IMG/VR virus record: IMGVR_UViG_3300017991_000001
Location: 124,001 to 188,000 of that record
Reading direction: 5' to 3' (one strand)
DNA: 64,000 nucleotides
The notes under the pieces were generated by a model. It saw only the letters and a program-made list of their open reading frames with translations, was not told the origin of the DNA and ran no database searches. The position numbers were made by a program, and so were the translations under genes. Positions 4,438 through 37,874 of this stretch are shown one piece after another (the first letter of the stretch is position 1; every line of letters begins with the position of its first letter).

Positions 4438-5199
4438 GTGGACGCGTTTGACGCCCGCATAAGACAACGTGCCCTTGAGAAGCGCGCAGCCATTCCCTCC
4501 AGACTGTATGAGATGGCCTCGTCCGGCGATCTGCCGAAGTCGCGTGTCGGTCTGGCGCTCGAAGAGGTGGCGTTGGATCGTACGCAAAAGGCCGTCGACG
4601 AGGGCGTCATCTCGCCCAACCAGGCACGTTCCTTTTACCGGATGCAAATGCTTTCGCTGGGGCGCCATCAGCCCGAACTTGAACAGGCCACCGAGGTACC
4701 CACCATGCGCCTGGGTGAGCAGGCCCCGGTGACGCCCGGTGAATTGGCATGGGCCGGCGGCATGTCCGTGGGTGTTCCCTGGCTGGGGTCTCGAATGCCC
4801 GGCGTGAGCAGCCTGTTCGGCGGCCCCATTAGCACAGGCGAAGCGGCGAAGTGGACAGTTTCTCCAAAGTTCATCGGTTTCTCGGTGCTGGGAGATGTAC
4901 TAGGTTCCGGTCTGGGAGCCTTCTCACAGCCCGGTTACCAGAAAGGCGAACAGGGATACATGTCGGCGGTGGGTTCGGCATTCAAGGAGCATATGCGCGG
5001 TGTCGGCCAGGCCAGTCGCGAGGCTCGTGATCGGTACGGCTTGTTCGGTGTGCCGCTCCAGGCGCTGCACGGTATCTGGAATCCGCTCGCCAGTACGGGC
5101 TACATGCTGAAGAACGTCAAGGACACCGTCTTCGACAAGGCGGGCAGCGCGGCGCTGCGCGCGCAGCACGCCGTGGAGAAAGCACTCAAGGAGGCCTAG
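4438..5199 (+). CDS. Putative virion protein with Gly-rich hydrophobic segments
   Basis: GTG start after GAGGA; LEKRAA motif near the N-terminus; GxxxG-rich core. Confidence 0.55.
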   Translation: MDAFDARIRQRALEKRAAIPSRLYEMASSGDLPKSRVGLALEEVALDRTQKAVDEGVISPNQARSFYRMQMLSLGRHQPELEQATEVPTMRLGEQAPVTPGELAWAGGMSVGVPWLGSRMPGVSSLFGGPISTGEAAKWTVSPKFIGFSVLGDVLGSGLGAFSQPGYQKGEQGYMSAVGSAFKEHMRGVGQASREARDRYGLFGVPLQALHGIWNPLASTGYMLKNVKDTVFDKAGSAALRAQHAVEKALKEA

Positions 5200-5200
5200 G

Positions 5201-5812
5201 ATGCCGTTCAAAAGCGAGGCACAACGACGCAAGTTCTACGCCATGGCCGACCGGGGTGAGATCTCCGACGAGACCGTGGACGAATGGGAGTCGAAAACGA
5301 AGGACAAGGACCTTCCCGAACGGGTTGAAAAGAAGGACGAGAAGAAAGAGAAGAAGGCGGCCCTGGCCCGTATACTGAAGGTGGCCAACGTCATGCTCGA
5401 CACCCGGCACCAGGCGCGTAAGGAGCGCCTGCTGCCCGTCCTCATGCAGAAGACGGCCATCATGCGCACCGCGCTGAAAGCAGTCGGCCGGGCGGCGGCG
5501 AAGAAGAAGCCGATGGCGTTCGGGGAGAGTGCGGAGCAGTTGGGCCTGTCCGTTGGCGACATCCTGGGTATGCGCGGCAAGGGCGGCTACCTGACGCGCC
5601 GCGGAGCCAAGGCCGGTTTGCGTGAAGCCGGCGAGAAGGCCAAGGGCAAGAAACTGAAGAAGCTGTTGATGGAGGAACTGGCGCGACGCCGGCGCATGGT
5701 CGGCTACGGCGCGCTGGGCACCGGCGGCACGGGCGTCGGCTTGCTGGGCTACATGCTGGGCAGTTCCGGCGCGCCCTCGCAGCCTTACCCCGATTACTAT
5801 CCATCTATGTGA
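5201..5812 (+). CDS. Putative head-associated protein with MPFKSEAQRR N-terminal module and C-terminal hydrophobic helix
   Basis: MPFKSEAQRRKFYAMADRGEIS...LPERV; KKAA and QKTA motifs; GYGALGTGGTGVGLLGYMLG. Confidence 0.65.
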   Translation: MPFKSEAQRRKFYAMADRGEISDETVDEWESKTKDKDLPERVEKKDEKKEKKAALARILKVANVMLDTRHQARKERLLPVLMQKTAIMRTALKAVGRAAAKKKPMAFGESAEQLGLSVGDILGMRGKGGYLTRRGAKAGLREAGEKAKGKKLKKLLMEELARRRRMVGYGALGTGGTGVGLLGYMLGSSGAPSQPYPDYYPSM

Positions 5813-5819
5813 GGTAATC

Positions 5820-6218
5820 ATGGGCGACGAGACCAGGGAGAGGATCAACGCCTTCAAGGTCGGCTTTCTGAGAAAGCTGGCCGAGGAGGGCATCACGCCT
5901 GACGAGTTCCACGAGCACGTCAAGCAGGCCTTCGACCCCATGGCGGCGGCGGTCGCCGGGGCCGGGGGCGCTGCGGACGTCGGAACGAAGCTGGTGGGAG
6001 CGGGGGCCGACGTGGGCGGCGCGCTGCTGAAGAACCTGGCGTATGCCGGGGTGTTGGCGCCCATGGCGCTGGGCGGCACGGCCGGCGCGATCGAGGCCCG
6101 CTTGACCAGCCCGTCCGTGGAGGACGTGGAGGCCATGCGCCGCGCCGAACTGGCGGCCAAGTACGAGCAGATGGCCCGCGTGATCAGGCAAAGGCTTAGA
6201 GCCAAGAGAGGCGCTTGA
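5820..6218 (+). CDS. Small Gly/Ala-rich putative virion protein
   Basis: RBS GAGGT; VKQA motif followed by a Gly-zipper-like segment. Confidence 0.6.
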   Translation: MGDETRERINAFKVGFLRKLAEEGITPDEFHEHVKQAFDPMAAAVAGAGGAADVGTKLVGAGADVGGALLKNLAYAGVLAPMALGGTAGAIEARLTSPSVEDVEAMRRAELAAKYEQMARVIRQRLRAKRGA

Positions 6219-6220
6219 GC

Positions 6221-6676
6221 ATGTCTGGCAACAATGGAAACGGGAGCAAGGCGCCCGAGGTCGAACCGGTAGGAGAGGTTTCGGACATCAGCGCCGAGGA
6301 GTCGCAACAGGCCGAGCGGCAAAAGCAGGAAGATCTGGACCCGCAGTTGGTGGACCCGTACGGCATGCACGGCAAGGAGTCCATCCTGCCGGGCTTCGAC
6401 GGCCTGCCTTTCCGGGGCCGCGTGCCGAACCTGAAGGAGACGGACCGGGTTCAGCCACAGGTCGCAGCGCAGGTCCACGTGCACGTGCTGGACCTGTCGA
6501 AGAGCGAGGACATGAAGCTGTACCGGAAGATCTGCCAGGTGGTCGGCAACGGTATGGGACAGATCTCCTTCGAGAAGCACGAGTACGACGAGGACATCAA
6601 GAACTGGCGCGTGTTCATCCGTTGGATGCTTAACTACGCGCACATGCCGTCCGAGTCCGGCAGCCTGTTCATGTGA
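6221..6676 (+). CDS. Hypothetical phage protein
   Basis: Typical codon usage; ATG 6221 preferred over TTG 6215. Confidence 0.6.
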   Translation: MSGNNGNGSKAPEVEPVGEVSDISAEESQQAERQKQEDLDPQLVDPYGMHGKESILPGFDGLPFRGRVPNLKETDRVQPQVAAQVHVHVLDLSKSEDMKLYRKICQVVGNGMGQISFEKHEYDEDIKNWRVFIRWMLNYAHMPSESGSLFM

Positions 6677-6684
6677 GGTGAGCT

Positions 6685-7557
6685 ATGGGTGAATTCGCGA
6701 AACGGGCCGCCGAGGTCCTGGAGCCGTGGGAGCTGGAGCTGGAGCGCCAGCAGAAGAAGCTCTACAAGAAGATCCCGTCCTCCAAGGAAGAGGCCACCAC
6801 TTCGGCGATCAACCGCATCAACGAGCTGCGCCAGAAGAGCTACATGGCCGGCTACCTGATGAGGCATCTGCGTAGCGAGGAAGAGGAAACCAAGCGCCTG
6901 CTGCCGGAGGACTCGGTGGGCGTGCCCGGCAGGGAGATCTCCCTGGCGCTCCCTGAGAAGAAGGCTGGTGCGCTGGACGCGTTGACGCGCCCGCTGCGCG
7001 AGACGGCCGAAGACCTCAAGATGCACGCCTCCCAACGCATCGACGAGGAGAAGGAACGGCTCACACGCACCACGTCCGATCCCGGCACGCTGCCCTGGTA
7101 CTACCCCATGATGGCGCTGACCGCCCCCAACGCCTTCGCCGAGGGGTTCCGCAAGGCGGAGAAGGACATCGACGCCGAGGAGCTGGCCCGCATCAACGAG
7201 CGGCTCGTCAAAGCCAAGGCCGAGTTCGAGAAGGCGCTCGAGGAGGAGTACAGCCAGTCGGGCAGCTTGAAGGTCAGCAGCGCCCGGCCTCAAAGCGCCG
7301 GCGAGATGATCGACGGGCTGGCGCAGATGCATGTCAAGTGCGCCGAGGGTGAGCTCAACCAGATCCTGGGCACCTACCTGGCGCTGGCCGCGCTGCTGGG
7401 TCAGGGCGCGCACATGACGGCCAAGGAATGGGCCGAGAAGCGCGACCCGAAGAGACAGAAGCTGAAACTCGTGCGCGAGGCCGTGCGCCAGCGCATGCGT
7501 TCGTACATGCCACCCATCCGGGTGGAGGCCGGGGAACCTGGACTGGCCATAAGCTGA
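6685..7557 (+). CDS. Helical putative virion protein
   Basis: RBS GAGGTG; AKRAA, EKKA, VKCA motifs; coiled-coil character. Confidence 0.6.
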   Translation: MGEFAKRAAEVLEPWELELERQQKKLYKKIPSSKEEATTSAINRINELRQKSYMAGYLMRHLRSEEEETKRLLPEDSVGVPGREISLALPEKKAGALDALTRPLRETAEDLKMHASQRIDEEKERLTRTTSDPGTLPWYYPMMALTAPNAFAEGFRKAEKDIDAEELARINERLVKAKAEFEKALEEEYSQSGSLKVSSARPQSAGEMIDGLAQMHVKCAEGELNQILGTYLALAALLGQGAHMTAKEWAEKRDPKRQKLKLVREAVRQRMRSYMPPIRVEAGEPGLAIS

Positions 7558-7571
7558 CACGGGGTCCTCAC

Positions 7572-10500
7572 ATGCCTGAAGCCCTTCTCAATGACACGCT
7601 GAGCGCGCCGGTCAAACCAAAACCGGCCGTCACGCATCGCACGTTCGACGACGTGGACACCATGCGCGGCTCCATCTTCGACGGGGTGCTCGACGCCGTG
7701 GCCAAGAAGTACCCGGTCGAGAACACCCGCTATCGCATGGAAGTGGCTGATCTGGGCTACGGCAAGGACAAGCCTTACTCCCTGGAAGACCAGAAAAAAG
7801 CGATCATGACGGGCCAGACGATGACCCGTCAGCTGTCCGGCACCTGGCGCCTGGTCGATAAGGAGTCGGGCAAGGTCGTCGATTCAAAGAAGGCCGTGAT
7901 CGCACACGTGCCCTATGTCACGCCTCGGGGCACCTTCATCTACCGCGGCAACGAGTACACCATCTCCAACCAGATGCGCCTCAAGCCCGGGGTCTACTCC
8001 CGCGTCAAGGACAACGGCATGATCGAGGCCCACTTCAACGTGGCGCCCGGCACCGGCCCGTCCTTCCGCATGTACATGGAGCCGGACACCGGCATCTTCC
8101 GCCTGGCCGTGGGCCAGTCGACGCTGAAGATGTACCCGATCCTGAAGGCCATGGGCGTGCCCGACCGCGAGATCGAGCAGATCTGGGGAAAGGAGCTCCT
8201 GCAGAAGAACACCGAGGCGGCCGACCCGCGCGCCGTCTCCCGCGCCTTCGCCAAGCTGGTGGCGACCCGCGCGGACCAGCCGGGCATCGACGCCGACCGG
8301 GAAGGGCTGGCCAAAGTCGCCCAGTTCACCCAGGTGGACAACGACCTGGTCGTGGGGCCTTCGCGGGTCCACGGCAACGGCTTGTACACGCAGCAGCCCG
8401 TCCCGGCCGGCACGCGCGTCACGCCGGCCTACATCCGCATCGGCATGACCGGCGACACCGAGGCCGACTTCGTGCGTTCCGGGCCGGCGCTGTGGGTCAA
8501 TCACCAGCCCGACGACATGGCCAACACGGTCACGGCCGTAGCACCCGACGGGCGCATGGCCAACCTGATCGCCACCCGCGACATCGAGCCGTGGGAGGAG
8601 ATCACCTGCGACTACGCCAAGAACCACGACACGCTGACGGACTGGGTCAAGCAGCTGTACGACATGGACGAGATGGAGGCCGAGAGGTCGATCTCCAAGA
8701 TCGCCATGTCGAAGACGGCGGCCAAGATCCCGACCGTGGCCGTGGACCTGGACGGCACGCTGGCCGAGATGTACGAGTCCTTCGATCCCAAGAAGATCCC
8801 CGACCCCCGCCCCGGCGCGCGCAAGGCCATGAAGAAGTTCCAGGACAAGGGCTACCGGGTCCTGATCCACACCGTGCGGGGCGACGACCAGCTGACCAAG
8901 GACTGGTTGCACAAGCACGACATCCCCTACGACTACGTCAACGAGAACCCGGACCAGCCCGACACTGCATCCGACAAGCTGATCGCCGACGCCTACGTGG
9001 ACGACCGCGGCGTGCAGGGTGCGCAGGCCTGGCACAAGATCGAGCAACAGGTCTCCGCCAAGCTGGAGAAGGAAGCCAAGATCGGTTTCAAGGACCAGGA
9101 GATGCGGTGGACGAAGTTGTGGTTCCACGGCACCGTGCGGGCCCAGCGCCAGGGCAACGACGGCAAACCGTGGGTCTATGTCCAGGTCCACAAGGGGCTT
9201 ATGGACGCTGCTCGGGACAGCCTCGCCAATGAAGGCGTGGACATCGAGAAGAACCCCAACGACCCGCACATCACGCTTCTGCGCTCCAGCGAAGCCCAGG
9301 AGCTGATCGACCGGCACGGCGAGGAGCAGTGGAAGGGCGCGGCCAAGGACGGCAAGTCCATACGCTTCGCGCTCAGGCGCATGATGTCCCTGATCCCGGA
9401 CGGGTGGGACGGCGTGGACCGGGTCTGGTTCATCGAGGTGGAGAGCCCGGACTTGAAGAAGTACCGGCGCGATCTGGGTTTTCCCGAGCTGCCCATCGGC
9501 GACAACGGCAACGAGCACCGCTTCCACATCACCTTTGCCATCCACCGCTCCAAGAACGAGCCCAAGCGCGCGGCGTACCTGCTTTCCGGTGCCGGCATCG
9601 GAATCGTGGAGCGCGCCTTTGAGAAGGCCGCCGGGGCCACCGACCAGGGCATCGAGCTCAACCAGGTCTTCGACCGCATGGAGCTGGACCCTGACGTGAC
9701 CAAGTCCACGGTCGGTGAGGGCTTCAAGAACGCCGGCATCCCGACGCTGCTCAGGGTCAGCCAGAAGCTCCTGAACATTTCAAAGGGGATGGAGGACACC
9801 GACGACCGGGACTCGCTGGCCTACCAGAAGCTGTACGGTCCCGAGGACTTCTTCACCGAGCGCGTGAACCGCGACGCCGGCCAGACCGGCCGGAAGCTGT
9901 TGTGGCGCGCCACGCTGCGGGGCAACCTGAAACACGTGCCTACGGGGGCGCTTTCCGGGCAAATGTTCGGCGTGCTGCTGAGAAGCGGCATGGGGATGAG
10001 TCTCGAAGAGACCAACCCCATGGACATCATGGACCAGAACCTCCGCGTGATCCGCCTGGGCGAGGGCGGCATTCCGTCGCTGGACTCGGTGCCGGAGGAG
10101 AGCCGAAACGTCCAGCCCAGCCACTTCGCCTACCTGGACCCGATCAGAAGCCCGGAGAGCGAGAAGATCGGCGTGGACTCGCGCGTGTCCCATCGCGTGA
10201 TGAAGGGTTCCGACGGGCAGTTCCACGCGCCCATGTTCAACCCGAAGACAGGCAAGGAGGAGATGGTCTCCGCGGCAAAGGCGGCCGAGTCGGTGGTGGC
10301 CTTTCCGGGCGAGCTGAACAAGAAGCGCGGCAAGGTCAGGGCCATGGTCAAGTCCAGGCAGGTCCAGTACGTGGACCGCAAGGACGTGGACTACGAGGTC
10401 GAAGACCCCAACCAGATGTTCACGCTCAGCTCCAACCTGGTTCCCCTGGTGTCGGGCATCAAGGGCGGGCGCCTGCTGATGGGCGCCAAGTACTTCACCC

Positions 10501-13500
10501 AGGCGCTGCCCCTGCGCGAGCGGGAGGCCCCGCTGGTCCGCAACCTGGAGAGGAGCGGCAAGTCCTTTGACGAGCTGTACGGGGACCGGGTGGGTGCCAT
10601 ACGCGCGCAGGCTCCGGGTGTGGTGACCTCGATGAACAAGAACGGCATCAAGGTCAAGTACGCCGACGGGACCACCAAGGAGCATGAGCTGTATCGCAAC
10701 TTCCCCTTCAACCGGAAGAGCCTGACCGGGGATTGCGAGGTGCTGATCAAGCGTAACGGCGAACTCCTTGTTACGCGACTGGACGCCTACGAATTCGAGC
10801 AGGGGGACCTGACGCTGTCGATCGACCCTGAAACGAAGTTGTCCGCATGGATGGAGGTAACTGGCTATACGCGTCACGAGTGTGACAAGCGCCTGTACCG
10901 GGTCAAAACGGATTCAGGCAGAGCCTTCACAATAACTGAGGATCACAGCTTGATGGTGATGGGCCCTGAAGGCGATCTCGTCCCCGCTTACCCAAGCGCT
11001 TGCGTCGTTGGGCACACGCGCATACCCGTGGCGCTGCCTCGTTTTGAAGGGTGTCGCGGATTTTTCGGCGAGGACAAGCTGGGAACGTTGACCGGCCTGT
11101 ACCTGGCGGAAGGACATATTCCTCAGAACCAGCCCAATCTCATCATCATAGCGGTTGCGCCGGAAGAGCGGGCAGACGAGGTAATGCGGCTGTTTCGCGA
11201 ACTTGGCTGCAAACCTTTCAGGAACGGCGGTTCCGTGTGCGCTACCGATGCTGATTTGAGCAAGTTTCTCATAAAGAACTGCGGACACCTTTCGCACGGC
11301 AAGTTTATCGGCCGACAGCTGATGAATGCCAACATGTCGTTCAAACAGGCTCTGTTACAAGGCTATTTGGCCGGCGACGGCAACTTGTGGGCGGACAGAA
11401 ACGGCACTGTTCAGCTCACGGCAGTGACCGTATCCAAACGTCTTCGCGACGATCTGGTCGTTCTCGCGGGCACTTTGGGAGTCTTCACGACGCTTTTCGA
11501 CGTACCCCGTGACAACGAGGCATGGCGTGACGGCTACGGGCTGCGCTTCCCGAACAAGGAATTGAAGCGGACGCGGTGGATGTTCTACGAGGACCGTCAA
11601 CGCCTGCTCGACGCGTTGGTTAGGGAGAACACGCGCGCGTCCAAGTTTGACGTGGTTCCGGTGCCACGGGAAGCGCGTAAAGCCTTGTATGGCGAGTTGG
11701 AAACTGTGCCGCATTTCGTCTACAAAACGGTTAACAAGGGCTACGTGGCGAAACACAGAGTGCGTACGGGGTCTGGTGTTTTTGGAAAGTGGGGCGCCTC
11801 CGACGTGTCCTGGGACCGGATCAAGTCGATTACGGAGGTGCCCAGCGAGGAATATGTTTATGACCTGTCCGTGGCGGCATCCGAGGCTTTTGCGGTAAAC
11901 GGCGGCGTCGTTGTCCACAACACGTTCATCCACAACACCCCGACCGTTAAGATCGGGGACCGGGTCCGCAAGGGGCAGTTGCTGGCCACCAGCAACTACA
12001 CGGACGACCAGGGCGCGCTGGCGCTGGGCACCAACCTGCGCACCGCCTACGTGCCCTACAAGGGCCTCAACTTCGAGGACGCCATTGTCATCTCCGAGTC
12101 GGCGGCCAAGCGGCTCTCCAGCGAGCACATGTACCAGCACACGCTCGACAAGGAGGACGACACGGTCACGGGGCGCAAGCAGTTCGTCTCGATCTACCCG
12201 ACGACCTTCAACCGCAAGCAGCTAGGCGCGCTGGACGAGCGCGGCGTGGCCAAGGTGGGCACCACCATCAAGTACGGCGACCCCGTGGTGCTGTCCATGC
12301 GCAAGAACCAACCCTCGGCCGTGCATCGGGGCCGCAAGCCCATGTACACCGACACCTCCATCACCTGGGATCACGAGTCCCCGGGCATGGTGACCGGCGT
12401 GGACGAGACGGACGACGGCGGCTTCAACGTGACGGTGAAGGCCTACATGCCGGCACAGGAGGGGGACAAGCTGGCCGGCCGCTACGGCGACAAGGGCGTG
12501 ATCTCCAAGGTCGTGCCCGACGACCAGATGATGCACGACCGGGACGGCAAGCCCTACGAGATCCTGCTCAACCCGTTGGGCATCATCACGCGCGGCAACC
12601 CCTCCCAGGTGTACGAGACGCTGCTGGGCAAGGTGGCCCGCAAGCGGGGCAAGCCCATTAGTGTGCCGGGCTTCATGGACGAGAGCATGGTGGACTACGT
12701 GCGGAAGGAGCTCAGCCGGGAGCGGATGAAGTCGCATGAGGACCTCTACGACCCGACCACCAACCGCAAGGTGCCGGACATCCTGACCGGGGACCGCTTC
12801 ATCTTCAAGCTGCACCACACCGCCGAGTCCAAGGGCAAGGGCCGCGACGTGGGCGCCTACACCTCCGAGGGCATCCCGGCCAAGGGCGGCGAGTTGGGCT
12901 CAAAGCGGGTCAGCAACATGGAGCAGAACGCCCTGCTGTCCCATGGCGCGACCGGCGTGCTGCGCGACGCCCAGGTGGTCAGGGGCCAGCGCAACGACGA
13001 CTTCTGGCGGGCCTTCAGGATGGGCTACACGCCCCCCTCGCCGAGCGTGCCCATGGTCTACGACAAGTTCCTCAACCACCTGCGCGGCGCCGGCATCAAC
13101 GTCAAGAAGAACGGCGACCGGACGCAGCTGCTGGCCATGACCGACAAGGACGTGGACGAGATGACCAGCGGGGAGATCACCGAGGCCAAGACGGTGGACT
13201 CCGACACGCTCAAGGAGATCGACGGTGGGCTGTTCGATCGCGGGCTCACCGGAGGGCACGGGGGCAGCCGCTGGAGCCATATAAAACTGGCCGAACCCAT
13301 GCCCAATCCCGTGATGGAAGAGCCCATTCGTCGCATGTTGGGCCTGACCAAGGTCAAGTTCGAGGAGGTCCTGCAGGGCAAGGAGGACATCGGCGGCGAG
13401 ACGGGCACCAAGGCCATCGGGGCGGCGCTGAAGCGCATCAACCTGGACGAGGCCATCGACAACGCCAAGCTGATCATCAAGGACGGCGCGAAGTCCAAGC

Positions 13501-14504
13501 GGGACAACGCGGTCAAGACGCTGGGCTACTACGAGACGCTCAAGAAGGCCGGGATGAAGCCCAGCGACCTGATGCTCTCCAAGGTGCCGGTGCTGCCGCC
13601 GTCCATGCGCCCGATCACCCAGTACCGGTCCATGCAGCTCTCGGCCGACCCGAACTTCCTGTACCGGGACCTGATCAACGCCAACACGGACCTCAAGGAG
13701 ATCTCGTCCGAGCTGGGCCGCAGGCACGGCGGCAGGGCGCGGTTGCGCACCTACCACGCCTTCAAGGCCGTGACCGGCCTGGGCGACCCCGTGCAGGCCA
13801 AGACCCAGGAGAAGCGGGTCAAGGGTCTCCTGGCCCACGTCTTCGGCTCCAGCCCGAAGTTCGGGATGTTCCAGCGCCGGGTGCTGGGCAGCCCCGTGGA
13901 CGTGGTGGGCCGGGCGGCGATCACGCCCAACCCGAGCCTGAGCATGGACCAGGTGGGCATCCCCGAGGACAAGGTCTGGACGATCTACCGGCCCTTCGTG
14001 GTCCGGCGCCTGATCCGCCGCGGCATGCCGGCGATGGACGCGGCCAAGGCTGCGGCCAACCGCACGGAGGTGGCGGCCAACGCGCTGCAGGAGGAGATTT
14101 CCACGCGGCCCGTTCTGATCAACCGCGCGCCCACGCTGCACCGCTACGGGTTCATGGCGGCCTGGCCGGTGCTGACCAAGGGCAAGACCCTGCAGGTCTC
14201 CCCGACCACGGTGGGCGGCTTCAACGCGGACTTCGACGGCGACGCGATGAACTACCACGTGCCGGTGACCGACGAGGCCGTCGCTGACGCGGTGGACAAG
14301 ATGCTGCCCAGCAAGAACCTGAAGTCCGCGAGGTTCTTCAAGACCCATTACGTGCCCGTCAACGAGTTCCTGATGGGCCTGTACCTGGCCAGTACGGCCA
14401 AGAGCGACAAGCCGTTACGGGTGTTCCGGGACAAGAAGGACGTGCTGGCTGCCTACCAGCGCGGGGACATCGGCCTGGGAGACCGTGTTTCCATAAGGAG
14501 CTGA
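7572..14504 (+). CDS. Phage multi-subunit RNA polymerase: beta fused to the N-terminal half of beta', with SET/HAD/2H insertion and an intein
   Basis: beta motifs GTFIYRGNEYTISNQMRLKPGVYS, GLNFEDAIVISE, GDKLAGRYGDKG, LNPLGIITRGN; beta' motifs PVLPPSMRP, NRAPTLHR and catalytic FNADFDGDAM; ATG 7572 follows the previous stop. Confidence 0.95.
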   Translation: MPEALLNDTLSAPVKPKPAVTHRTFDDVDTMRGSIFDGVLDAVAKKYPVENTRYRMEVADLGYGKDKPYSLEDQKKAIMTGQTMTRQLSGTWRLVDKESGKVVDSKKAVIAHVPYVTPRGTFIYRGNEYTISNQMRLKPGVYSRVKDNGMIEAHFNVAPGTGPSFRMYMEPDTGIFRLAVGQSTLKMYPILKAMGVPDREIEQIWGKELLQKNTEAADPRAVSRAFAKLVATRADQPGIDADREGLAKVAQFTQVDNDLVVGPSRVHGNGLYTQQPVPAGTRVTPAYIRIGMTGDTEADFVRSGPALWVNHQPDDMANTVTAVAPDGRMANLIATRDIEPWEEITCDYAKNHDTLTDWVKQLYDMDEMEAERSISKIAMSKTAAKIPTVAVDLDGTLAEMYESFDPKKIPDPRPGARKAMKKFQDKGYRVLIHTVRGDDQLTKDWLHKHDIPYDYVNENPDQPDTASDKLIADAYVDDRGVQGAQAWHKIEQQVSAKLEKEAKIGFKDQEMRWTKLWFHGTVRAQRQGNDGKPWVYVQVHKGLMDAARDSLANEGVDIEKNPNDPHITLLRSSEAQELIDRHGEEQWKGAAKDGKSIRFALRRMMSLIPDGWDGVDRVWFIEVESPDLKKYRRDLGFPELPIGDNGNEHRFHITFAIHRSKNEPKRAAYLLSGAGIGIVERAFEKAAGATDQGIELNQVFDRMELDPDVTKSTVGEGFKNAGIPTLLRVSQKLLNISKGMEDTDDRDSLAYQKLYGPEDFFTERVNRDAGQTGRKLLWRATLRGNLKHVPTGALSGQMFGVLLRSGMGMSLEETNPMDIMDQNLRVIRLGEGGIPSLDSVPEESRNVQPSHFAYLDPIRSPESEKIGVDSRVSHRVMKGSDGQFHAPMFNPKTGKEEMVSAAKAAESVVAFPGELNKKRGKVRAMVKSRQVQYVDRKDVDYEVEDPNQMFTLSSNLVPLVSGIKGGRLLMGAKYFTQALPLREREAPLVRNLERSGKSFDELYGDRVGAIRAQAPGVVTSMNKNGIKVKYADGTTKEHELYRNFPFNRKSLTGDCEVLIKRNGELLVTRLDAYEFEQGDLTLSIDPETKLSAWMEVTGYTRHECDKRLYRVKTDSGRAFTITEDHSLMVMGPEGDLVPAYPSACVVGHTRIPVALPRFEGCRGFFGEDKLGTLTGLYLAEGHIPQNQPNLIIIAVAPEERADEVMRLFRELGCKPFRNGGSVCATDADLSKFLIKNCGHLSHGKFIGRQLMNANMSFKQALLQGYLAGDGNLWADRNGTVQLTAVTVSKRLRDDLVVLAGTLGVFTTLFDVPRDNEAWRDGYGLRFPNKELKRTRWMFYEDRQRLLDALVRENTRASKFDVVPVPREARKALYGELETVPHFVYKTVNKGYVAKHRVRTGSGVFGKWGASDVSWDRIKSITEVPSEEYVYDLSVAASEAFAVNGGVVVHNTFIHNTPTVKIGDRVRKGQLLATSNYTDDQGALALGTNLRTAYVPYKGLNFEDAIVISESAAKRLSSEHMYQHTLDKEDDTVTGRKQFVSIYPTTFNRKQLGALDERGVAKVGTTIKYGDPVVLSMRKNQPSAVHRGRKPMYTDTSITWDHESPGMVTGVDETDDGGFNVTVKAYMPAQEGDKLAGRYGDKGVISKVVPDDQMMHDRDGKPYEILLNPLGIITRGNPSQVYETLLGKVARKRGKPISVPGFMDESMVDYVRKELSRERMKSHEDLYDPTTNRKVPDILTGDRFIFKLHHTAESKGKGRDVGAYTSEGIPAKGGELGSKRVSNMEQNALLSHGATGVLRDAQVVRGQRNDDFWRAFRMGYTPPSPSVPMVYDKFLNHLRGAGINVKKNGDRTQLLAMTDKDVDEMTSGEITEAKTVDSDTLKEIDGGLFDRGLTGGHGGSRWSHIKLAEPMPNPVMEEPIRRMLGLTKVKFEEVLQGKEDIGGETGTKAIGAALKRINLDEAIDNAKLIIKDGAKSKRDNAVKTLGYYETLKKAGMKPSDLMLSKVPVLPPSMRPITQYRSMQLSADPNFLYRDLINANTDLKEISSELGRRHGGRARLRTYHAFKAVTGLGDPVQAKTQEKRVKGLLAHVFGSSPKFGMFQRRVLGSPVDVVGRAAITPNPSLSMDQVGIPEDKVWTIYRPFVVRRLIRRGMPAMDAAKAAANRTEVAANALQEEISTRPVLINRAPTLHRYGFMAAWPVLTKGKTLQVSPTTVGGFNADFDGDAMNYHVPVTDEAVADAVDKMLPSKNLKSARFFKTHYVPVNEFLMGLYLASTAKSDKPLRVFRDKKDVLAAYQRGDIGLGDRVSIRS
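8346..8615 (+). other. SET domain inserted in RNAP beta
   Basis: PSRVHGNGLYT (GxG), WVNHQPDDMAN (NH motif), IATRDIEPWEEITCDY (EExxxDY). Confidence 0.85.
8727..9053 (+). other. HAD-superfamily phosphatase domain inserted in RNAP beta
   Basis: Motif I VAVDLDGTL, motif II IHTVR, YVNENP, motifs III/IV KLIADAYVDDR. Confidence 0.85.
9078..9551 (+). other. 2H phosphoesterase domain inserted in RNAP beta
   Basis: Two HxT motifs, PHITLL (9267) and FHITFA (9525), with intervening VWFIEVESPDLKKYRRDLG. Confidence 0.8.
10719..11921 (+). mobile_element. Intein (401 aa) with LAGLIDADG homing endonuclease in RNAP beta
   Basis: Starts SLTGDCEVLI, ends YVYDLSVAASEAFAVNGGVVVHN before Thr; LGTLTGLYLAEGH and LLQGYLAGDGN motifs; shifted codon usage; removal restores FPFNRK-TFIHNTPTVKIGDRVRKGQLLA. 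Confidence 0.93.
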
Positions 14505-14559: not shown

Positions 14560-15186
14560 ATGTCCGCGTCCAAAGGTGTTGCCAAGAAGGTGCTGCCCAA
14601 GCCGAAAGGCAAGGAGGGGAAGATTCTCGTGACCACGCCCAAGCCCGACAAGGTTTCCGTACAGGCGGTCAAGACGTCCGCGCTGCGCCGAGCAGAGATC
14701 CTCAGCCTGATCACCAAGGAAGGTTTCGGCTTTGCCACGAAGGAGGGTAGCGCTGCCAAGGGGCTCGTGAACGCTGCCGGCAAGCTGCGCTCCGGGGCTC
14801 GAAAGGGCCTCAAGTCTTACGGCAAACTGGTCGGTAGCAAGACGAAGCCCGGAATTGCTACAGACAAGGAACGGAAGTTGTTCAACAAGGCCAAGAAGAA
14901 GGGCGTCAAGAGCAAGAAAGGCGCCAAGGCTCTCGATAAGTTCAAGCGCGAGGCTTCCAAGAAGACCGTGAAGCACTTGAACCGTTCGCAGAAATTCTTC
15001 GGAAAGCTGAAGGACGACAAAGGCAATCGCATTAAACTCAGCTCCGCTCAGCTGTTGGGCCACTTCCTGAAAAGGGCGCTGACCAAGCAGGGTTCGGAGC
15101 AGATCATCAAGCAGGCTTCGGACCGCGAACGGGCGGCCCGTGTGCTTTCAGCCGTCCACAAGGCGGCACGCAGCTATGGACGCTAA
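14560..15186 (+). CDS. Very Lys-rich basic protein, possibly DNA-binding/internal head protein
   Basis: RBS GGGAG; dense Lys content; IIKQA motif. Confidence 0.65.
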   Translation: MSASKGVAKKVLPKPKGKEGKILVTTPKPDKVSVQAVKTSALRRAEILSLITKEGFGFATKEGSAAKGLVNAAGKLRSGARKGLKSYGKLVGSKTKPGIATDKERKLFNKAKKKGVKSKKGAKALDKFKREASKKTVKHLNRSQKFFGKLKDDKGNRIKLSSAQLLGHFLKRALTKQGSEQIIKQASDRERAARVLSAVHKAARSYGR

Positions 15187-15388
15187 GGCGTACCTCATCA
15201 AGCAGGCGCTGGGGATGAGTGGCCTCCAGATGCAGATGGAGATGCCCTTTTCACCACCCCGGCCCGTGGCGCACATGGACACGCTGGAGGACCGCCGTAC
15301 CCGGGAAAAGATGCTGGCGGACCTGCCGCCATCCAGACGTGAGGGGATCTTAAGGGCCATACAGGCCAGAATGAGGGCCAGACGATGA
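15176..15388 (+). CDS. Small protein with AYLIKQA leader
   Basis: Begins MDAKAYLIKQALG; overlaps both neighbours. Confidence 0.6.
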   Translation: MDAKAYLIKQALGMSGLQMQMEMPFSPPRPVAHMDTLEDRRTREKMLADLPPSRREGILRAIQARMRARR

Positions 15389-16167
15389 ACAGACTCAACC
15401 CGCAACTGATCAAGCTGGCACGCGGCGCGATCCGCAAGGCGGAGAAGACGGCTGCCAAGAAGGAAGCCTTCGTGCCCATGTCACCCGCCGGTGCGGCTCC
15501 CGCACCTCCGGGTGCGCCCATGCCGCCTCCACCGGCAGGCGCGCCAGCGGCCCCCATGCCGCCCGATCCCATGATGGCCGGCGCCATGCCGGCTGACCCC
15601 ATGGCTGCAGGTGGGGCACCGCCGGCTGAAGGCGCGCCCATGGACCCGGCGGCTGCCGGTGCCGGCGGCGAGACCATGACGGTTGCGCTGCCCGACCTGA
15701 TCCAACTCTTCACCATGATCGCCCAGCAGGGCGGCGCAGGCGGAGCGCCCGCTCCCGCGCCCGCCGAAGGCGGCGGTGGCGAAGGCGGCGCCGAGCCCGA
15801 GAAGAAGCCCAGCGCGGCGGCGGGCAAGGACGCCAAGATCGACATGATCCTGTCCAAGCTGGACCAGCTGATCGGGGCGCTGGGCATGGCCGACATGATG
15901 GCGCCCGCCGAGGGCGGGGCAGCCATGCCTCCCGCAGAGACGGGGATGGAAGGCGAAAACGCCCTGGCTCCCGCCGAAGGCGGCATGGCTCCCGAAGCAC
16001 CCATCCCGGCGATCGATGCCGGCGGCGCGGCACCGCCCCCGCCCACGGGTGGCATGATGGTGGCTGCCGCGGAGGGCGAGAAGAAGGCATCCGGCAACGG
16101 CAACGTATCCAGGGCGAAGATGCTCAGCCGCATTTGCAGCAACCTGAGGAGTGGCCAGCGACGCTGA
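15385..16167 (+). CDS. Pro/Ala/Met-rich low-complexity putative head protein
   Basis: MNRLNPQLIKLAR, EKTAAKKEA, EKKAS motifs. Confidence 0.65.
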   Translation: MNRLNPQLIKLARGAIRKAEKTAAKKEAFVPMSPAGAAPAPPGAPMPPPPAGAPAAPMPPDPMMAGAMPADPMAAGGAPPAEGAPMDPAAAGAGGETMTVALPDLIQLFTMIAQQGGAGGAPAPAPAEGGGGEGGAEPEKKPSAAAGKDAKIDMILSKLDQLIGALGMADMMAPAEGGAAMPPAETGMEGENALAPAEGGMAPEAPIPAIDAGGAAPPPPTGGMMVAAAEGEKKASGNGNVSRAKMLSRICSNLRSGQRR

Positions 16168-16415
16168 TGAACGTGCGTGTGCAGGGCGAGGGCTTCGAGC
16201 CCGTGCAGGTTTTGGACAATGTCCAGTCCGTGGTCATTCTGGACGACCACGGGCAGCCGGTCATCGCCGTGCAGCGCACGAAGGAGAATCAGATCCTTTC
16301 CATCAAAGCCGGGGACCCCCATTTCGACAAGACCTTGGAGGCGATGGGCATCGGGCTGAACGCCCGGGTGGTCAGTGGGCATTTTCCGAAAGGGGTACCA
16401 AGTGATCCGTCCTGA
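16167..16415 (+). CDS. Small hypothetical protein
   Basis: TGATG coupling to the upstream gene; MNVRVQGEGFEP... Confidence 0.55.
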   Translation: MNVRVQGEGFEPVQVLDNVQSVVILDDHGQPVIAVQRTKENQILSIKAGDPHFDKTLEAMGIGLNARVVSGHFPKGVPSDPS

Positions 16416-18252
16416 TTATGTCCCTCCCCTCCTGCCCGGCGTGGGGCCCCTGTCTTTTGAGAAGGCGGCGGTTGCCCCCTTGGTGGCGGCTGCCCTGCCC
16501 ACGGTCGGTAGAGTGGCGGGAGGGTGGCTTTTGCGGCGAGGGGGAGCAGCACTGCTTCGGCGGTTGGGGCAGCGAGTTATCCCTGCGCTGCGCAGGTTTT
16601 TTGGAAGAGGTACTTCAGCGGCACGTTCCGCTCTGCGTGCTGACATTACCCCCAGGAAAGCTTTTGAACGCATACCAGCACAAGTAAAGTTGCCGAAGCG
16701 TGATCCCATCACAGGCAAGAAAGCACCTCGTCACATGCGTGGTTGGCAGGATCGCTCCATGATTACAGAAGGTGTGGCACCTGGAACGCGTCCGCCTGCG
16801 GCGCCTGCCGCAGCGTCAGGGAAGCCGGGATTGGCTACACGTTTCGTTGACTGGGCCACGGGCCGCAAAAATGTGGACCCTTCCACGGGCAAAACACCTG
16901 GCGTGATGGGTCAGGCCATGAACGTGGGGGGCAAGGTATTGAACACCGCGCTCTACGGGAGCATAGGGGCTGACCTTTTGGGTTCACTGGGTTCGTTGTG
17001 GAAAGGCGGTTCGCCACCTGTAGCGTCCGGGTCTGCGGGACATCAAATGTGGAACTATCCCAAGACGGCCGAGCGTAGAGCTGCCTTCGAGGAGGGTGTG
17101 GACCGGTTTTGCAAGGAAGCCGACTTCGACGACGAGGACAAGCAAGCATTATACACGTTGATCGAAACAGCCGCTGAGTTGGAAAAGCGGGGCGTGGACA
17201 CTTGGGAGCTCCTTAAAAAGCCGGTTGTGGACCCTTTGGGCACGTGGATAGGCGTGGGGCATACTCTGCTGTCCGGGCTGGGAGGAATAGGTTCGGATAA
17301 GGGTATCTTAGGAGCAATGGAACACACGGGCAAGAAGTATATGAGAAGTGGACCAAATCCGTTCGAGAAAGGAATTTCAAGTATCTTTTGGGGCGACCCT
17401 GGCGCACGTGCTGAAAGTGCTGCCAAGAAAAATCAAACCCCCGAGCAGCGGGAACAGGCTTCTCGCAGGGATCAGGTTCGCGGCTTGAGCGAAGAGATCA
17501 TGAAGGACGAGGGGCTACGCGAAGACATTGAGAGGCGAGGGTTCAGGGAACTAAGGCGCTGGGCCAAATCCAGGAACGTGCCGTTGGGCGTGGCACGCGA
17601 CGCGCTGAAGGGTACGACTTCGGTGCATCCTCAACTCGCTGGTGCGCTAAAACAACCTACGAAGCCCGGTGTTACGCCCGGTTCACGGCTCATTGGTGTA
17701 CGAAGCGGAGCTAGGCAAACACAAGGTGGCTCCGTCCCACTCAGGCTGGGTCCAATGCCTGCGGCGAGGCCTCCGGCTTCAAATACACCTGGAGCGGCGC
17801 CCGCACCAACCGAACCCGCCACGGCGCCGGCGGCAAGTACATCCCCTTCTGCCGCCGAGGCGGCTTCATCGTTCAAGAACCAGGTGAACGCCCGGAACCC
17901 CGGCGCGAAGTGGCTCAACCTGAGCAAGGGCGAAGGTGCGATCCTGCCCGTGGATCAGTCGGCCGGCCCGAACCTGCAGCGCAGGGCCCAGACAAACGCC
18001 TTCTTCAACATGCAGCCGCAGCAGGGCAACGTGACCATGGCCCAGCGTGGCGGCACGGGCGTGGAGACGCTCACCCCGCGTACGCAGTCAAGCAACATGC
18101 CCTTCGCGGAGGGTACGGGTTCGCCGTCCACGGGCATGACCGACTTCAGCGACTGGATGAAGACCACCTACGGCGACACCAGTAAGATGACCGACCCCAG
18201 CAACATGATCTCTACGGGTGTGGACATGAAGACGCCCAAGCCGAACGTTTAG
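16402..18252 (+). CDS. Large mosaic putative virion protein
   Basis: Likely GTG start 16402 (track start 16375); FEKAA, PKTA, CKEA motifs; atypical codon usage over about 16450-17850. Confidence 0.6.
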   Translation: MIRPDYVPPLLPGVGPLSFEKAAVAPLVAAALPTVGRVAGGWLLRRGGAALLRRLGQRVIPALRRFFGRGTSAARSALRADITPRKAFERIPAQVKLPKRDPITGKKAPRHMRGWQDRSMITEGVAPGTRPPAAPAAASGKPGLATRFVDWATGRKNVDPSTGKTPGVMGQAMNVGGKVLNTALYGSIGADLLGSLGSLWKGGSPPVASGSAGHQMWNYPKTAERRAAFEEGVDRFCKEADFDDEDKQALYTLIETAAELEKRGVDTWELLKKPVVDPLGTWIGVGHTLLSGLGGIGSDKGILGAMEHTGKKYMRSGPNPFEKGISSIFWGDPGARAESAAKKNQTPEQREQASRRDQVRGLSEEIMKDEGLREDIERRGFRELRRWAKSRNVPLGVARDALKGTTSVHPQLAGALKQPTKPGVTPGSRLIGVRSGARQTQGGSVPLRLGPMPAARPPASNTPGAAPAPTEPATAPAASTSPSAAEAASSFKNQVNARNPGAKWLNLSKGEGAILPVDQSAGPNLQRRAQTNAFFNMQPQQGNVTMAQRGGTGVETLTPRTQSSNMPFAEGTGSPSTGMTDFSDWMKTTYGDTSKMTDPSNMISTGVDMKTPKPNV

Positions 18253-30821: not shown

Positions 30822-30887
30822 TTGGTGCGGGCAGCTGCCAAGAGCGCATCCCGCGAGACGTAAGGCCAATTGATAAGGAGACAGGCC

Positions 30888-36781: not shown

Positions 36782-36794
36782 AAGGAGACACACA

Positions 36795-37040
36795 ATGGCC
36801 GGTAAGGAAGAGCAAGTCAAAGAGGCGGAAGCCAACATCCAGGAGCGCCTGCAGGCGTTCGACTACGGGATGGAACTCTTCTTCAAGGAAGCGGGCATCG
36901 AGAAAGCCGCGGTTGCGCAGGCCGTCGGTCTCGAAGAGCAGGACCTTGCCCCGAAGTCGGCACGATGGCTGAAGGAACAGATGGAGGCGGCGAACAAGGA
37001 AGCAGAGAGCAAAGACGCCGCCCCGACAAAGGAGGAGTAG
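36795..37040 (+). CDS. Small acidic protein with K-x-A motifs
   Basis: RBS AAGGAG before ATG 36795; VKEA, FKEA, EKAA. Confidence 0.6.
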   Translation: MAGKEEQVKEAEANIQERLQAFDYGMELFFKEAGIEKAAVAQAVGLEEQDLAPKSARWLKEQMEAANKEAESKDAAPTKEE

Positions 37041-37115
37041 GCCCGTTCGGTCGGGTCTCTCCGCTACTGCGCAGGATAGGCCTGACCTGGGAGCCCGACC
37101 ACGAGGAGATCCTCG

Positions 37116-37862: not shown

Positions 37863-37874
37863 GGAGACGCTCAC

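What the first reader, a model, noticed from the sequence alone, without database searches (positions are those of the whole stretch)
8313..9632. RNA polymerase as a polyprotein: SET + HAD + 2H cassette inside beta, each domain bounded by K-x-A motifs
Seen: a ~440-aa insert interrupts the beta lobe region. It reads LAKVA | SET | SKIAMSKTAA | HAD | EKEA | 2H phosphoesterase | PKRAA...FEKAA, after which beta sequence resumes. The same K-x-A motif is abundant in the scaffold and occurs near the capsid N-terminus. Established: phiKZ-like virion RNAP subunits and T4 head proteins are cut by the prohead protease at short motifs. Inference: the RNAP is packaged as a precursor, and the protease releases three free enzymes that are co-injected in fixed stoichiometry with a split, matured polymerase. 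I know of no RNAP used as an effector carrier this way.
Basis: partly seen in the sequence, partly recalled or inferred. Interest (0 to 1): 0.96.

Follow-up and report, generated by a model that had tools for sequence, protein, structure and literature searches.

The report
Enzyme cassette inside phage RNA polymerase
A large uncultured phage carries three small enzymes (SET, HAD, 2H) spliced in-frame into a surface loop of its RNA polymerase, each flanked by a short K-x-A motif that comparative evidence marks as the likely cutting site of the phage's head protease, so the polymerase probably doubles as a cleavable carrier of injected enzymes.

Summary
ORF 7572..14504 is a fused beta/beta'-N RNA polymerase. 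It carries a ~440-aa insert (8313..9632) in a beta-lobe loop that is only 10-35 aa long in 35 of 83 homologs. The insert holds SET, HAD and 2H phosphoesterase domains with intact catalytic motifs.

K-x-A is not chance:
- It is the most enriched of 273 gapped dipeptides in the head-module proteins (56 seen, 21 expected, z 8.2), and is not enriched in tail and other proteins.
- It is conserved in the capsid N-arm (K 86%, A 84% of 137 representatives) and invariant in a disordered linker of the protease.
- It flanks the 2H module in 40-41 of 46 homologs, against 11% background.
- All six junction motifs lie in or next to low-confidence linkers of the model.

ORF 26613..28073 has the T4 gp21 prohead-protease fold. 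One relative encodes the pieces as separate genes, broken at module borders. In the cultured relative Arash, the RNAP is the most abundant virion protein by mass spectrometry.

Cleavage and injection remain inferred. The phage is not phiKZ-like. The carrier idea has a precedent in N4-type virion RNAP "polyvalent proteins". I rate it a new variant of a known kind.

The parts
7572..14504 (+). Single ORF: RNAP beta fused to the N-terminal half of beta', carrying the enzyme insert and an intein
   Evidence: Pfam Rpb2_6 E 4e-48, Rpb1_2 E 6e-24 with NADFDGD at 14223..14243, Rpb1_1, Rpb2_3. The identical protein P0001 is seen on 6 contigs up to 211 kb.
7572..8312 (+). Beta N-terminal fragment (beta1/beta2, protrusion-lobe region) upstream of the insert
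   Evidence: Foldseek hits to bacterial beta chains and to the Mtb beta B1-B2 domains 4KBJ. Sequence alignment of the insert-less homolog P0184 to cyanobacterial beta 8gzg_C.
8313..8321 (+). Junction 1: K249-V-A251
   Evidence: Sits between low-confidence segments 234-242 and 254-256 of the model. K-x-A in most homologs in the alignment of 15; P0002 and P0003 have K-E-S.
8331..8666 (+). SET domain (putative protein lysine methyltransferase); NH motif at 8493..8507, C-terminal Tyr motif at 8601..8615
   Evidence: PF00856 28.9 bits, above cut-off. PDB SET methyltransferase hits. BFVD SET fold hits at probability 1.00. pLDDT 84-95.
8697..8720 (+). Junction 2: K377-I-A379 and K382-T-A384
   Evidence: Lies at low-confidence segment 384-386. 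K-x-A within 20 aa before the HAD domain in 7 of 9 homologs.
8724..9068 (+). HAD-superfamily phosphatase domain (DLDGT at 8742..8759; YVDD at 8994..9011)
   Evidence: phrog_1238 E 3.6e-22, phrog_415 polynucleotide-kinase family E 3.7e-9. PDB 2obb E 8e-5. Pfam LNS2 27.4 against 27.7.
9069..9077 (+). Junction 3: K501-E-A503, followed by the conserved K-I-G
   Evidence: Inside low-confidence segment 501-515. K-x-A just before 2H in 40 of 46 homologs against 10.7% background. The stop codon of the split-gene relative L007 sits next to this motif, judged by eye from the two translations.
9114..9554 (+). 2H phosphoesterase domain (HxT motifs at 9264..9281 and 9522..9539); the constant module of the cassette
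   Evidence: PF22547 2H-SAK 32.6 bits, above cut-off. Detected in 46 of the 48 insert-bearing homologs. pLDDT 81-96.
9564..9632 (+). Junction 4: K666-R-A668 ... K686-A-A688, after which beta resumes
   Evidence: Inside low-confidence segment 663-689. K-x-A just after 2H in 41 of 46 homologs.
10719..11921 (+). Intein with LAGLIDADG homing endonuclease, Ser1 ... His-Asn, +1 Thr; a separate insertion in beta
   Evidence: Pfam Intein_splicing E 8.7e-15, LAGLIDADG_3 E 1.1e-8. The exteins rejoin to the homolog consensus NRK|TFxHNTP.
18262..20100 (+). Beta' C-terminal half, a separate gene
   Evidence: Pfam Rpb1_5 E 1.6e-18. phrog_25354 positions 680-1101. 29% identity to Arash gp216.
26613..28073 (+). 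Prohead protease candidate. N-domain has the T4 gp21 fold; disordered linker holds the invariant K238-V-A240 (27324..27332); C-terminal helical domain
   Evidence: AF2 pLDDT 82, linker 229-244 below 50. The three best Foldseek hits are all T4 gp21 5JBL, probability 0.98-0.99. Invariant H117, S169, K238, A240 in 35 sequences.
28123..29394 (+). Acidic scaffold-like protein rich in K-x-A
   Evidence: 13 K-x-A against 5.8 expected, z 3.4. Sits between protease and capsid genes. No family hit.
30870..31835 (+). Major capsid protein (true start probably the ATG at 30924); conserved K37-E-A39 at 30978..30986
   Evidence: PDB 6wkk phage G gp27 capsid protein, E 1.2e-5. In 137 representatives K is 86% and A 84% conserved while the middle residue varies.

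Best explanation
The insert is a cassette of effector-type enzyme modules of the kind found in phage 'polyvalent proteins'. It has been built into a surface loop of the beta lobe of a multisubunit RNAP that is probably packaged in the virion.

Each module is joined by a flexible linker carrying K-x-A. In this phage clade K-x-A is most likely the recognition motif of the prohead protease (26613..28073, T4 gp21 fold).

Proposed course:
1. The beta/beta'-N precursor, with beta'-C, enters the prohead.
2. The protease cuts at the K-x-A linkers as it cuts scaffold, capsid N-arm and itself.
3. This leaves a beta that is split at the lobe but still assembled, plus free SET, HAD and 2H enzymes.
4. All of these are ejected with the DNA, so early transcription and early counter-defence or host modification start together.

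Shown here: the architecture, the domain identities, variable cassette content at one loop, motif conservation and enrichment, linker disorder in the model, the protease fold, and a gene-level split in a relative.

Inferred: packaging of this RNAP, actual cleavage and the bond cut, ejection, and the enzymes' substrates. Likely substrates are RNA-end healing or degradation of signalling nucleotides for 2H and HAD, and protein lysine methylation for SET.
For: 1. Of 83 RNAP homologs, 35 have only a 10-35 aa loop at this site. The other 48 carry inserts of 105-587 aa with shuffled content: 2H in 46, SET in about 11, HAD in 9, plus other modules not identified here.
2. K-x-A lies just before 2H in 40 of 46 homologs and just after it in 41 of 46, against 10.7% of random windows in the same proteins. 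It precedes HAD in 7 of 9. The neighbouring residues vary. Insert-less loops show no conserved K-x-A.
3. In Mu-portal polyvalent proteins P0022 and P0025 no K-x-A precedes the same HAD domain (P0016 has one some 10 residues upstream), so the motif is not intrinsic to the domain.
4. All six junction motifs lie in or at the edge of low-confidence linkers of the 800-aa model.
5. K.A ranks first of 273 gapped dipeptides in six head-module proteins (56 against 21.3, z 8.2; the next best is 3.6). In tail and other proteins it ranks 317 of 352. The enrichment recurs around the protease gene in a 32%-GC relative (L004), a 63%-GC relative (L006) and cultured phage Arash.
6. The capsid N-arm K-x-A is conserved in 125 of 137 representatives, and in Arash gp226.
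7. K238-V-A240 is invariant in the disordered interdomain linker of the protease, as expected for a self-cleavage site. The protease N-domain matches T4 gp21.
8. L007 encodes three separate, overlapping or abutting genes: betaN+HAD, a 597-aa module, and 2H+beta-rest. Chain continuity across the insert is therefore dispensable, and module borders coincide with gene borders.
9. Arash gp206 and gp216 RNAP are among the most abundant proteins in virion mass spectrometry.
10. The HAD, 2H and DUF5661 modules recur in portal-fused polyvalent proteins.
Against: - There are no proteomic or biochemical data for any insert-bearing phage.
- Characterised relatives of this protease fold cut after Glu. SPN3US cuts after AXE; T4's L/I-x-E is from my own knowledge. 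K-x-A would be a new specificity, and the scissile bond is unknown.
- In SPN3US the protease makes only N-terminal propeptides, not internal excisions.
- N4 virion RNAP, the precedent, is packaged unprocessed.
- The Arash virion preparation listed 116 proteins, so some contamination is possible. Arash is only about 30% identical and lacks the insert.
- Homologs are related, so conservation counts are not independent events.
- Lys/Ala/Glu-rich helical linkers could favour K-x-A for structural reasons.
Confidence: 0.55

Rival explanations
1. The cassette is a permanent, uncleaved decoration of the beta lobe. The RNAP is packaged and ejected as one polypeptide, as N4 virion RNAP is. The SET, HAD and 2H domains then act while tethered to the polymerase. 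K-x-A in the linkers is conserved for another reason, such as linker structure or docking in the prohead.
For: - N4 virion RNAP, the known polyvalent RNAP, is packaged unprocessed.
- Lineage-specific insertions in the bacterial beta lobe are normally permanent (own knowledge: Lane and Darst 2010).
- SPN3US protease produces only N-terminal propeptides.
- No cleavage data exist.
Against: - The same motif is conserved in the capsid N-arm and the protease linker, and is enriched only in head-module proteins.
- The motif is absent from insert-less loops and does not precede the same HAD domain in two portal-fused proteins.
- L007 shows the pieces work as separate polypeptides.
Confidence: 0.3
2. 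The RNAP is not a virion protein in this phage. The insert domains serve transcription or host takeover in the cytoplasm, and the K-x-A borders are a by-product of linker composition and shared ancestry.
For: - Packaging is inferred only from a 30%-identical relative.
- K-x-A is a loose motif: 12.5 are expected by chance in this protein.
- The homologs are phylogenetically related.
Against: - The RNAP genes sit next to the head module.
- K.A is the single outlier among all gapped dipeptides in head proteins, across genomes of 32-64% GC.
- The junction motif persists while the flanking residues diverge.
- The module vocabulary is that of packaged polyvalent proteins (PMC5512222).
Confidence: 0.12
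3. The fusion is an assembly or gene-calling artefact that joins separate genes.
For: One relative (L007) does have separate genes.
Against: - The ORF is uninterrupted, with uniform codon bias (GC3 0.89).
- The identical protein is seen on 6 contigs.
- 47 further homologs from independent metagenomes carry in-frame inserts at the same loop.
Confidence: 0.01

Closest known systems
Polyvalent proteins of phages and conjugative elements (Iyer, Burroughs, Anand, de Souza, Aravind 2017, PMC5512222), including N4-type virion RNAP fused to MPTase, ART, lysozyme or PBECR domains
   Same: Several unrelated effector-type enzyme domains share one polypeptide of a phage, next to packaging genes, and are proposed to be delivered with the DNA. 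The module vocabulary is shared: 2H-SAK, an LNS2-like HAD domain and DUF5661 occur in portal-fused proteins that also carry InPase and LPD3. An RNAP acts as carrier.
   Different: Here the carrier is a multisubunit beta/beta' RNAP, not the single-subunit N4 type. The modules are inserted inside a loop of a folded subunit, not appended. No MPTase domain is present. Processing is proposed to use the prohead protease at K-x-A. The word 'multisubunit' does not occur in that paper.
Prohead-protease maturation of head and ejection proteins in T4 (gp21, L/I-x-E; IPs, Alt) and phiKZ-like phages (phiKZ gp175, SPN3US gp245, AXE)
   Same: A protease of the same fold. A short motif is reused in capsid, scaffold, protease (self-cleavage) and internal proteins. 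Enzymes, including a virion RNAP, are packaged and ejected.
   Different: The motif here is K-x-A rather than x-x-E. The proposed cuts are internal, excising whole domains and splitting beta, whereas SPN3US cuts only N-terminal propeptides. The phage is unrelated to phiKZ at sequence level.
Lineage-specific insertions in the bacterial beta lobe (E. coli beta SI1 / beta-i4; own knowledge: Lane and Darst 2010)
   Same: An in-frame insertion in a surface loop of the beta2/lobe region that leaves the core fold intact.
   Different: Bacterial insertions are non-enzymatic BBM2 or SBHM repeats and are permanent. Here the inserts are catalytic SET, HAD and 2H domains, their content varies between close relatives, and they are flanked by a putative protease motif.
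Salmonella phage Arash gp206/gp216 and Vibrio phages D69, D148, D181
   Same: The same beta-beta'N fusion plus a separate beta'-C gene. The protease N-domain is 41% identical and the capsid protein 31%. K-x-A is conserved in the capsid N-arm and protease linker and enriched in neighbouring head proteins.
   Different: No insert in the lobe loop (the tblastn match is in two pieces). Arash gp206 is 1525 aa.

Membership tests
Multisubunit (double-psi beta-barrel) RNAP beta/beta' | Beta catalytic-region domain (Rpb2_6) and beta' active-site motif NADFDGD | tested here: met
   Rpb2_6 E 4e-48; Rpb1_2 E 6e-24; NADFDGD at 14223..14243. A homolog aligns to bacterial beta chains at E 1e-68.
SET-domain methyltransferase | Pfam SET above the gathering score; NH and C-terminal Tyr motifs; SET fold | tested here: met
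   28.9 bits against 22.4. WVNHQ and ITCDY are present, and the equivalent motifs appear in the homologs that have SET. BFVD SET hits at probability 1.00.
HAD-superfamily phosphatase | Motif I DxDxT and motif IV acidic pair; profile match | tested here: met
   DLDGT and YVDD are conserved. phrog_1238 E 3.6e-22. PDB 2obb E 8e-5. Pfam LNS2 is 0.3 bit below its cut-off.
2H phosphoesterase (2H-SAK subfamily) | Two H-x-T/S motifs; profile above the gathering score | tested here: met
   PHITLL and FHITFA are kept in all 15 homologs in the alignment; the second motif is seen in all 46. PF22547 32.6 against 27.
Polyvalent proteins (Iyer et al. 2017) | Two or more effector-type domains in one phage polypeptide, sharing the module vocabulary of known polyvalent proteins | tested here: met
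   Three enzyme domains plus the RNAP. The same 2H, HAD and DUF5661 modules occur in proteins with Portal_Mu, LPD3 and InPase.
Polyvalent proteins (Iyer et al. 2017) | Packaged in the capsid and delivered with the DNA | not testable with these tools
   Indirect only: Arash RNAP is abundant in virions, and the gene sits next to the head module.
T4 gp21 / HK97-type prohead serine protease | Assemblin-like fold with a conserved His and Ser | tested here: met
   The top three Foldseek hits are all 5JBL, probability 0.98-0.99, TM(target) 0.52-0.54. H117 and S169 are invariant, 52 residues apart. Their equivalence to the T4 catalytic residues was not checked residue by residue.
T4 gp21 / phiKZ-type prohead protease | Cleavage after Glu in an (L/I/A/S/G)-x-E motif | tested here: not met
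   The conserved and enriched motif is K-x-A with a variable middle residue. No x-x-E motif is conserved at the junctions. The actual cleavage chemistry is untested.
phiKZ-like virion RNAP | Sequence relationship to phiKZ-group phages and their 4-5 split subunits | tested here: not met
   No phiKZ-group hit. The nearest isolates are Arash and Vibrio D69. Beta is fused to beta'-N rather than split.
Bacterial beta-lobe lineage-specific insertion (BBM2 type) | The insert is made of BBM2/SBHM repeats | tested here: not met
   The insert consists of SET, HAD and 2H catalytic domains.
Intein (for 10719..11921) | Splicing blocks, terminal His-Asn, nucleophile at +1, and exteins that rejoin to the homolog sequence | tested here: met
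   Intein_splicing and LAGLIDADG_3. S1 ... HN|T; the flanks match the consensus NRKTFxHNTP.

The most novel reading that the evidence does not exclude
A multisubunit RNA polymerase subunit is a true polyprotein. A prohead protease with a previously undescribed K-x-A specificity, used across a very large uncultured phage clade and in cultured phage Arash, excises free SET, HAD and 2H effector enzymes from the beta lobe inside the capsid. It leaves a nicked but functional virion RNAP. All of these are co-ejected in 1:1 stoichiometry.
Probability: 0.45. Interest if true: 0.9.

Novelty: new variant of a known kind. Interest (0 to 1): 0.8.

Why it matters
If true, three things follow.

1. Effector delivery by polyvalent proteins would extend from appended domains on single-subunit N4-type polymerases to domains nested inside a cellular-type beta subunit. 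A multisubunit RNAP would then be matured by internal proteolytic excision.

2. It would define a new cleavage motif, K-x-A, for a T4 gp21-fold head protease. That protease family has more than 800 homologs and its capsid family more than 1100 cluster representatives in metagenomes. The motif would allow mature head proteomes and ejected proteins to be predicted for that whole clade.

3. The insertion loop is a natural, permissive site for building domains into RNAP beta. The variable cassette is a catalogue of candidate early counter-defence enzymes: 2H is nearly always present, with SET, HAD and other modules. These can be tested in laboratory strains.

The motif can be tested at once in the cultured phage Arash, for which virion mass-spectrometry data already exist.

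Tried and rejected
- Nucleotide search of the first 25 kb against isolated phages found nothing. No insert-bearing phage appeared among the 32 isolate matches to the RNAP N-terminal region.
- Pfam and PHROGs gave no name for the protease, scaffold, or ORFs 20633, 23226, 24064 and 25465. A PDB sequence search for the protease found nothing. Its identity came only from the predicted fold.
- Foldseek of the 800-aa model against PDB returned only RNAP beta chains, so it did not confirm the HAD or 2H folds. BFVD confirmed SET only. The PDB sequence hit for 2H is weak (E 0.45).
- I tested whether ORF 20633 is a Mu-type portal like those in P0022. There is no similarity. Its N-terminus weakly matches Arash gp218, annotated 'structural protein'.
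- I tested whether K-x-A is a general feature of polyvalent proteins. It is not enriched in 8 of 9 non-RNAP polyvalent-like proteins and does not precede HAD in P0022 or P0025. The motif therefore belongs to this clade, not to the modules.
- The phage G papers gave no cleavage-motif information. The Weinheimer and Aylward RNAP-phage paper does not mention inserts, inteins or virions.
- Rejected: the phiKZ-like label; a T4-style x-x-E motif at the junctions; an assembly artefact.
Full report
**What is there**

The window is high-GC (about 64%) and nearly all of its genes are on the + strand. It is part of a 211-kb viral contig, IMGVR_UViG_3300017991_000001.

ORF 7428..14504 most likely starts at the ATG at 7572. 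Residue numbers below count from codon 7569. In order, the protein reads:
- the beta N-terminus;
- an insert of about 440 aa;
- the rest of beta, itself interrupted by a Ser1...HN|Thr+1 intein with a LAGLIDADG endonuclease (10719..11921);
- with no stop, the N-terminal half of beta', including NADFDGD.

The beta' C-terminal half is a separate gene at 18262..20100. The nearest isolated phages, Salmonella phage Arash and Vibrio phages D69, D148 and D181, have the same beta-beta'N fusion plus a separate beta'-C gene. They are about 30% identical and match in two pieces, that is, without the insert.

**The insert**

Three domains are supported.
- SET: Pfam above its cut-off. All of the 16 best PDB sequence hits are SET methyltransferases. 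There are many viral SET fold matches at probability 1.00.
- HAD: the DLDGT and YVDD motifs are present. phrog_1238 E 3.6e-22. PDB 2obb E 8e-5.
- 2H: two HxT motifs, and 2H-SAK above its cut-off.

The catalytic motifs are kept in the homologs. The AlphaFold model of residues 1-800 (46-sequence alignment, mean pLDDT 82.6) gives three confident globular units separated by low-confidence linkers.

**Where it sits**

The insert-less homolog P0184 aligns along bacterial beta. The site lies in the beta1/beta2 (protrusion-lobe) region, upstream of the DDxDxL motif. The model's N-terminal part matches bacterial beta chains and the isolated Mtb B1-B2 domains.

**Comparative anatomy of the site**

I collected 83 RNAP homologs.
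- 35 have only 10-35 residues between the two flanking anchors.
- 48 carry inserts of 105-587 aa.
- 2H is detected in 46 of those 48 and is the constant module.
- SET is found in about 11 and HAD in 9. Other modules occur that I did not identify: a Cys-rich module before 2H in one subclade, an extra stretch of about 165 aa after 2H, DUF5661, and a Gly-rich hydrophobic module. P0180 carries a GNAT domain at its N-terminus.

The loop is thus a hot spot where modules are added and exchanged.

**Is K-x-A meaningful?**

In one sequence it is not: 12.5 are expected by chance in this protein. Five independent lines say it is.

1. *Enrichment.* Across all gapped dipeptides, K.A is the single outlier in six head-module proteins: 56 observed against 21.3 expected, z 8.2, with the next motif at 3.6. 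In tail and other proteins it ranks 317 of 352. The same local enrichment around the protease gene recurs in a 32%-GC relative, a 63%-GC relative and Arash.

2. *Capsid.* The capsid protein is related to phage G gp27. In 137 representatives of it, K37 is 86% and A39 84% conserved, while the middle and flanking positions are nearly free. A K-x-A lies in that short window in 125 of 137.

3. *Protease.* ORF 26613..28073 has an N-domain whose only significant fold matches are the three chains of T4 gp21. H117 and S169 are invariant. K238-V-A240 is invariant inside a disordered interdomain linker. That is the pattern of a self-cleavage site.

4. *RNAP junctions.* K-x-A lies just before 2H in 40 of 46 homologs and just after it in 41 of 46, against a 10.7% background. 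It precedes HAD in 7 of 9. The neighbouring residues vary.

5. *Controls.* Insert-less loops have no conserved K-x-A. In two Mu-portal polyvalent proteins no K-x-A precedes the same HAD domain.

All six junction motifs of the window protein lie in or next to low-confidence linkers.

**A natural split**

In contig L007 the region is three genes:
- betaN+HAD, whose stop codon sits next to the window's K-E-A junction, judged by eye from the two translations;
- a 597-aa module whose start overlaps that stop in the usual operon fashion;
- 2H + the rest of beta + beta'-N. This gene still has K-x-A after 2H.

The polymerase therefore does not need an unbroken chain across this loop, and module borders behave as protein borders.

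**Packaging**

In Arash, gp206 (beta-beta'N) has the most spectra of any protein in virion mass spectrometry, and gp216 (beta'-C) is among the top five. This supports a virion RNAP for the group. The caveat is that 116 proteins were listed for that preparation.

A prohead protease acts inside proheads. Conserved protease motifs in the RNAP are themselves an argument that it enters the prohead. This is inference.

**Most likely mechanism (confidence about 0.55)**

The precursor enters the prohead. The protease cuts at the K-x-A linkers. Free SET, HAD and 2H enzymes and a nicked RNAP are then ejected with the DNA.

The enzymes' roles are inferred from family knowledge.
- 2H domains of polyvalent proteins have been proposed to act as RNases or to degrade defence signalling nucleotides (PMC5512222). 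A literature search links the anti-CBASS nuclease Acb1 with the 2H phosphoesterase family.
- The HAD domain resembles polynucleotide-kinase-type phosphatases.
- SET domains methylate protein lysines.

**Rivals**
- A permanently tethered decoration, as in unprocessed N4 virion RNAP (0.3).
- A cytoplasmic, non-virion RNAP with coincidental motifs (0.12).
- An assembly artefact (0.01).

**Comparison with what is known**

The concept of effector domains carried on a virion RNAP and delivered at infection exists for single-subunit N4-type enzymes within the polyvalent-protein framework.

Head-protease trimming of ejected proteins is established for T4 and phiKZ-like phages. There it occurs after Glu, and in SPN3US, apart from the protease's own self-cleavage, only at N-terminal propeptides.

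Four things are new here:
- the multisubunit carrier;
- nesting of the modules inside a beta-lobe loop;
- the variable cassette;
- the K-x-A motif.

I therefore rate it a new variant of a known kind, of high interest, and directly testable.

Noticed in passing
window 10719..11921: A class-1 intein (Ser1, terminal His-Asn, Thr+1) with a LAGLIDADG homing endonuclease interrupts beta just before the conserved TFxHNTP block. Many homologs carry inteins or LAGLIDADG domains in this RNAP, and some have none.
   Followed up: partly
window 14560..18252: About 3.7 kb of ORFs with no family hits lie between beta'-N and beta'-C. They include a 208-aa protein that is 20.7% lysine (14560..15186), an Ala-rich 260-aa protein and a 625-aa protein. 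Arash also has unrelated genes between its two RNAP genes.
   Followed up: no
window 26613..28073 (residues 177-193): The protease domain has an invariant D177, C179, C182 and C193 cluster (D-x-C-x-x-C ... C-x-H), which looks like a small metal-binding insertion. A C-terminal helical domain of about 240 aa follows the K-V-A linker. No Pfam family covers any of this protein, although more than 800 homologs exist.
   Followed up: partly
window 20633..23224 and 24064..25452: Two head-module proteins of unknown function are strongly K-x-A-rich: 13 against 4.7 and 12 against 3.6 expected. They are candidates for processed internal or ejection proteins. The N-terminus of ORF 20633 weakly matches Arash gp218, annotated 'structural protein'.
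   Followed up: partly
window 30870..30924: The listed TTG start of the capsid gene is probably about 18 codons too far upstream. Homologs begin near the ATG at 30924.
   Followed up: partly
L007 3061..10326: A relative has the RNAP insert resolved into separate genes (betaN+HAD | 597-aa Gly-rich hydrophobic module | 2H+beta rest). The first junction is a 4-nt start/stop overlap and the second a 35-nt overlap. Sequencing frameshifts were not excluded, but the operon-style junction argues against them.
   Followed up: partly
P0180, P0201 and P0163-P0179 (RNAP homologs): Other module placements occur. P0180 has a GNAT acetyltransferase at the N-terminus of beta. P0201 has an N-terminal extension of about 470 aa. 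One subclade has a Cys-rich 'C..C...GWC.LW' module followed by K-[WLF]-A-Q just before 2H, and about 165 extra residues after it.
   Followed up: no
P0014-P0016 (non-RNAP giant proteins): Three polyvalent-like proteins start with the same 2H module, preceded by K-x-A-A within their first 25-45 residues. They also carry NUDIX, InPase, LigD phosphoesterase, ligase and intein modules. Whether they come from the same phage clade is unknown.
   Followed up: no
window 33128..34051: This protein contains a long serine run (SSSDPSSSSSSSSSSFFSSSSSSGG) near its N-terminus.
   Followed up: no
window, minus strand (e.g. 36600..40343, 5186..6643): Long minus-strand ORFs of up to 1247 aa appear to be shadow ORFs of the high-GC + strand genes. 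They overlap + strand genes with strong GC3 bias and have Arg/Gly/Ala-rich translations.
   Followed up: partly
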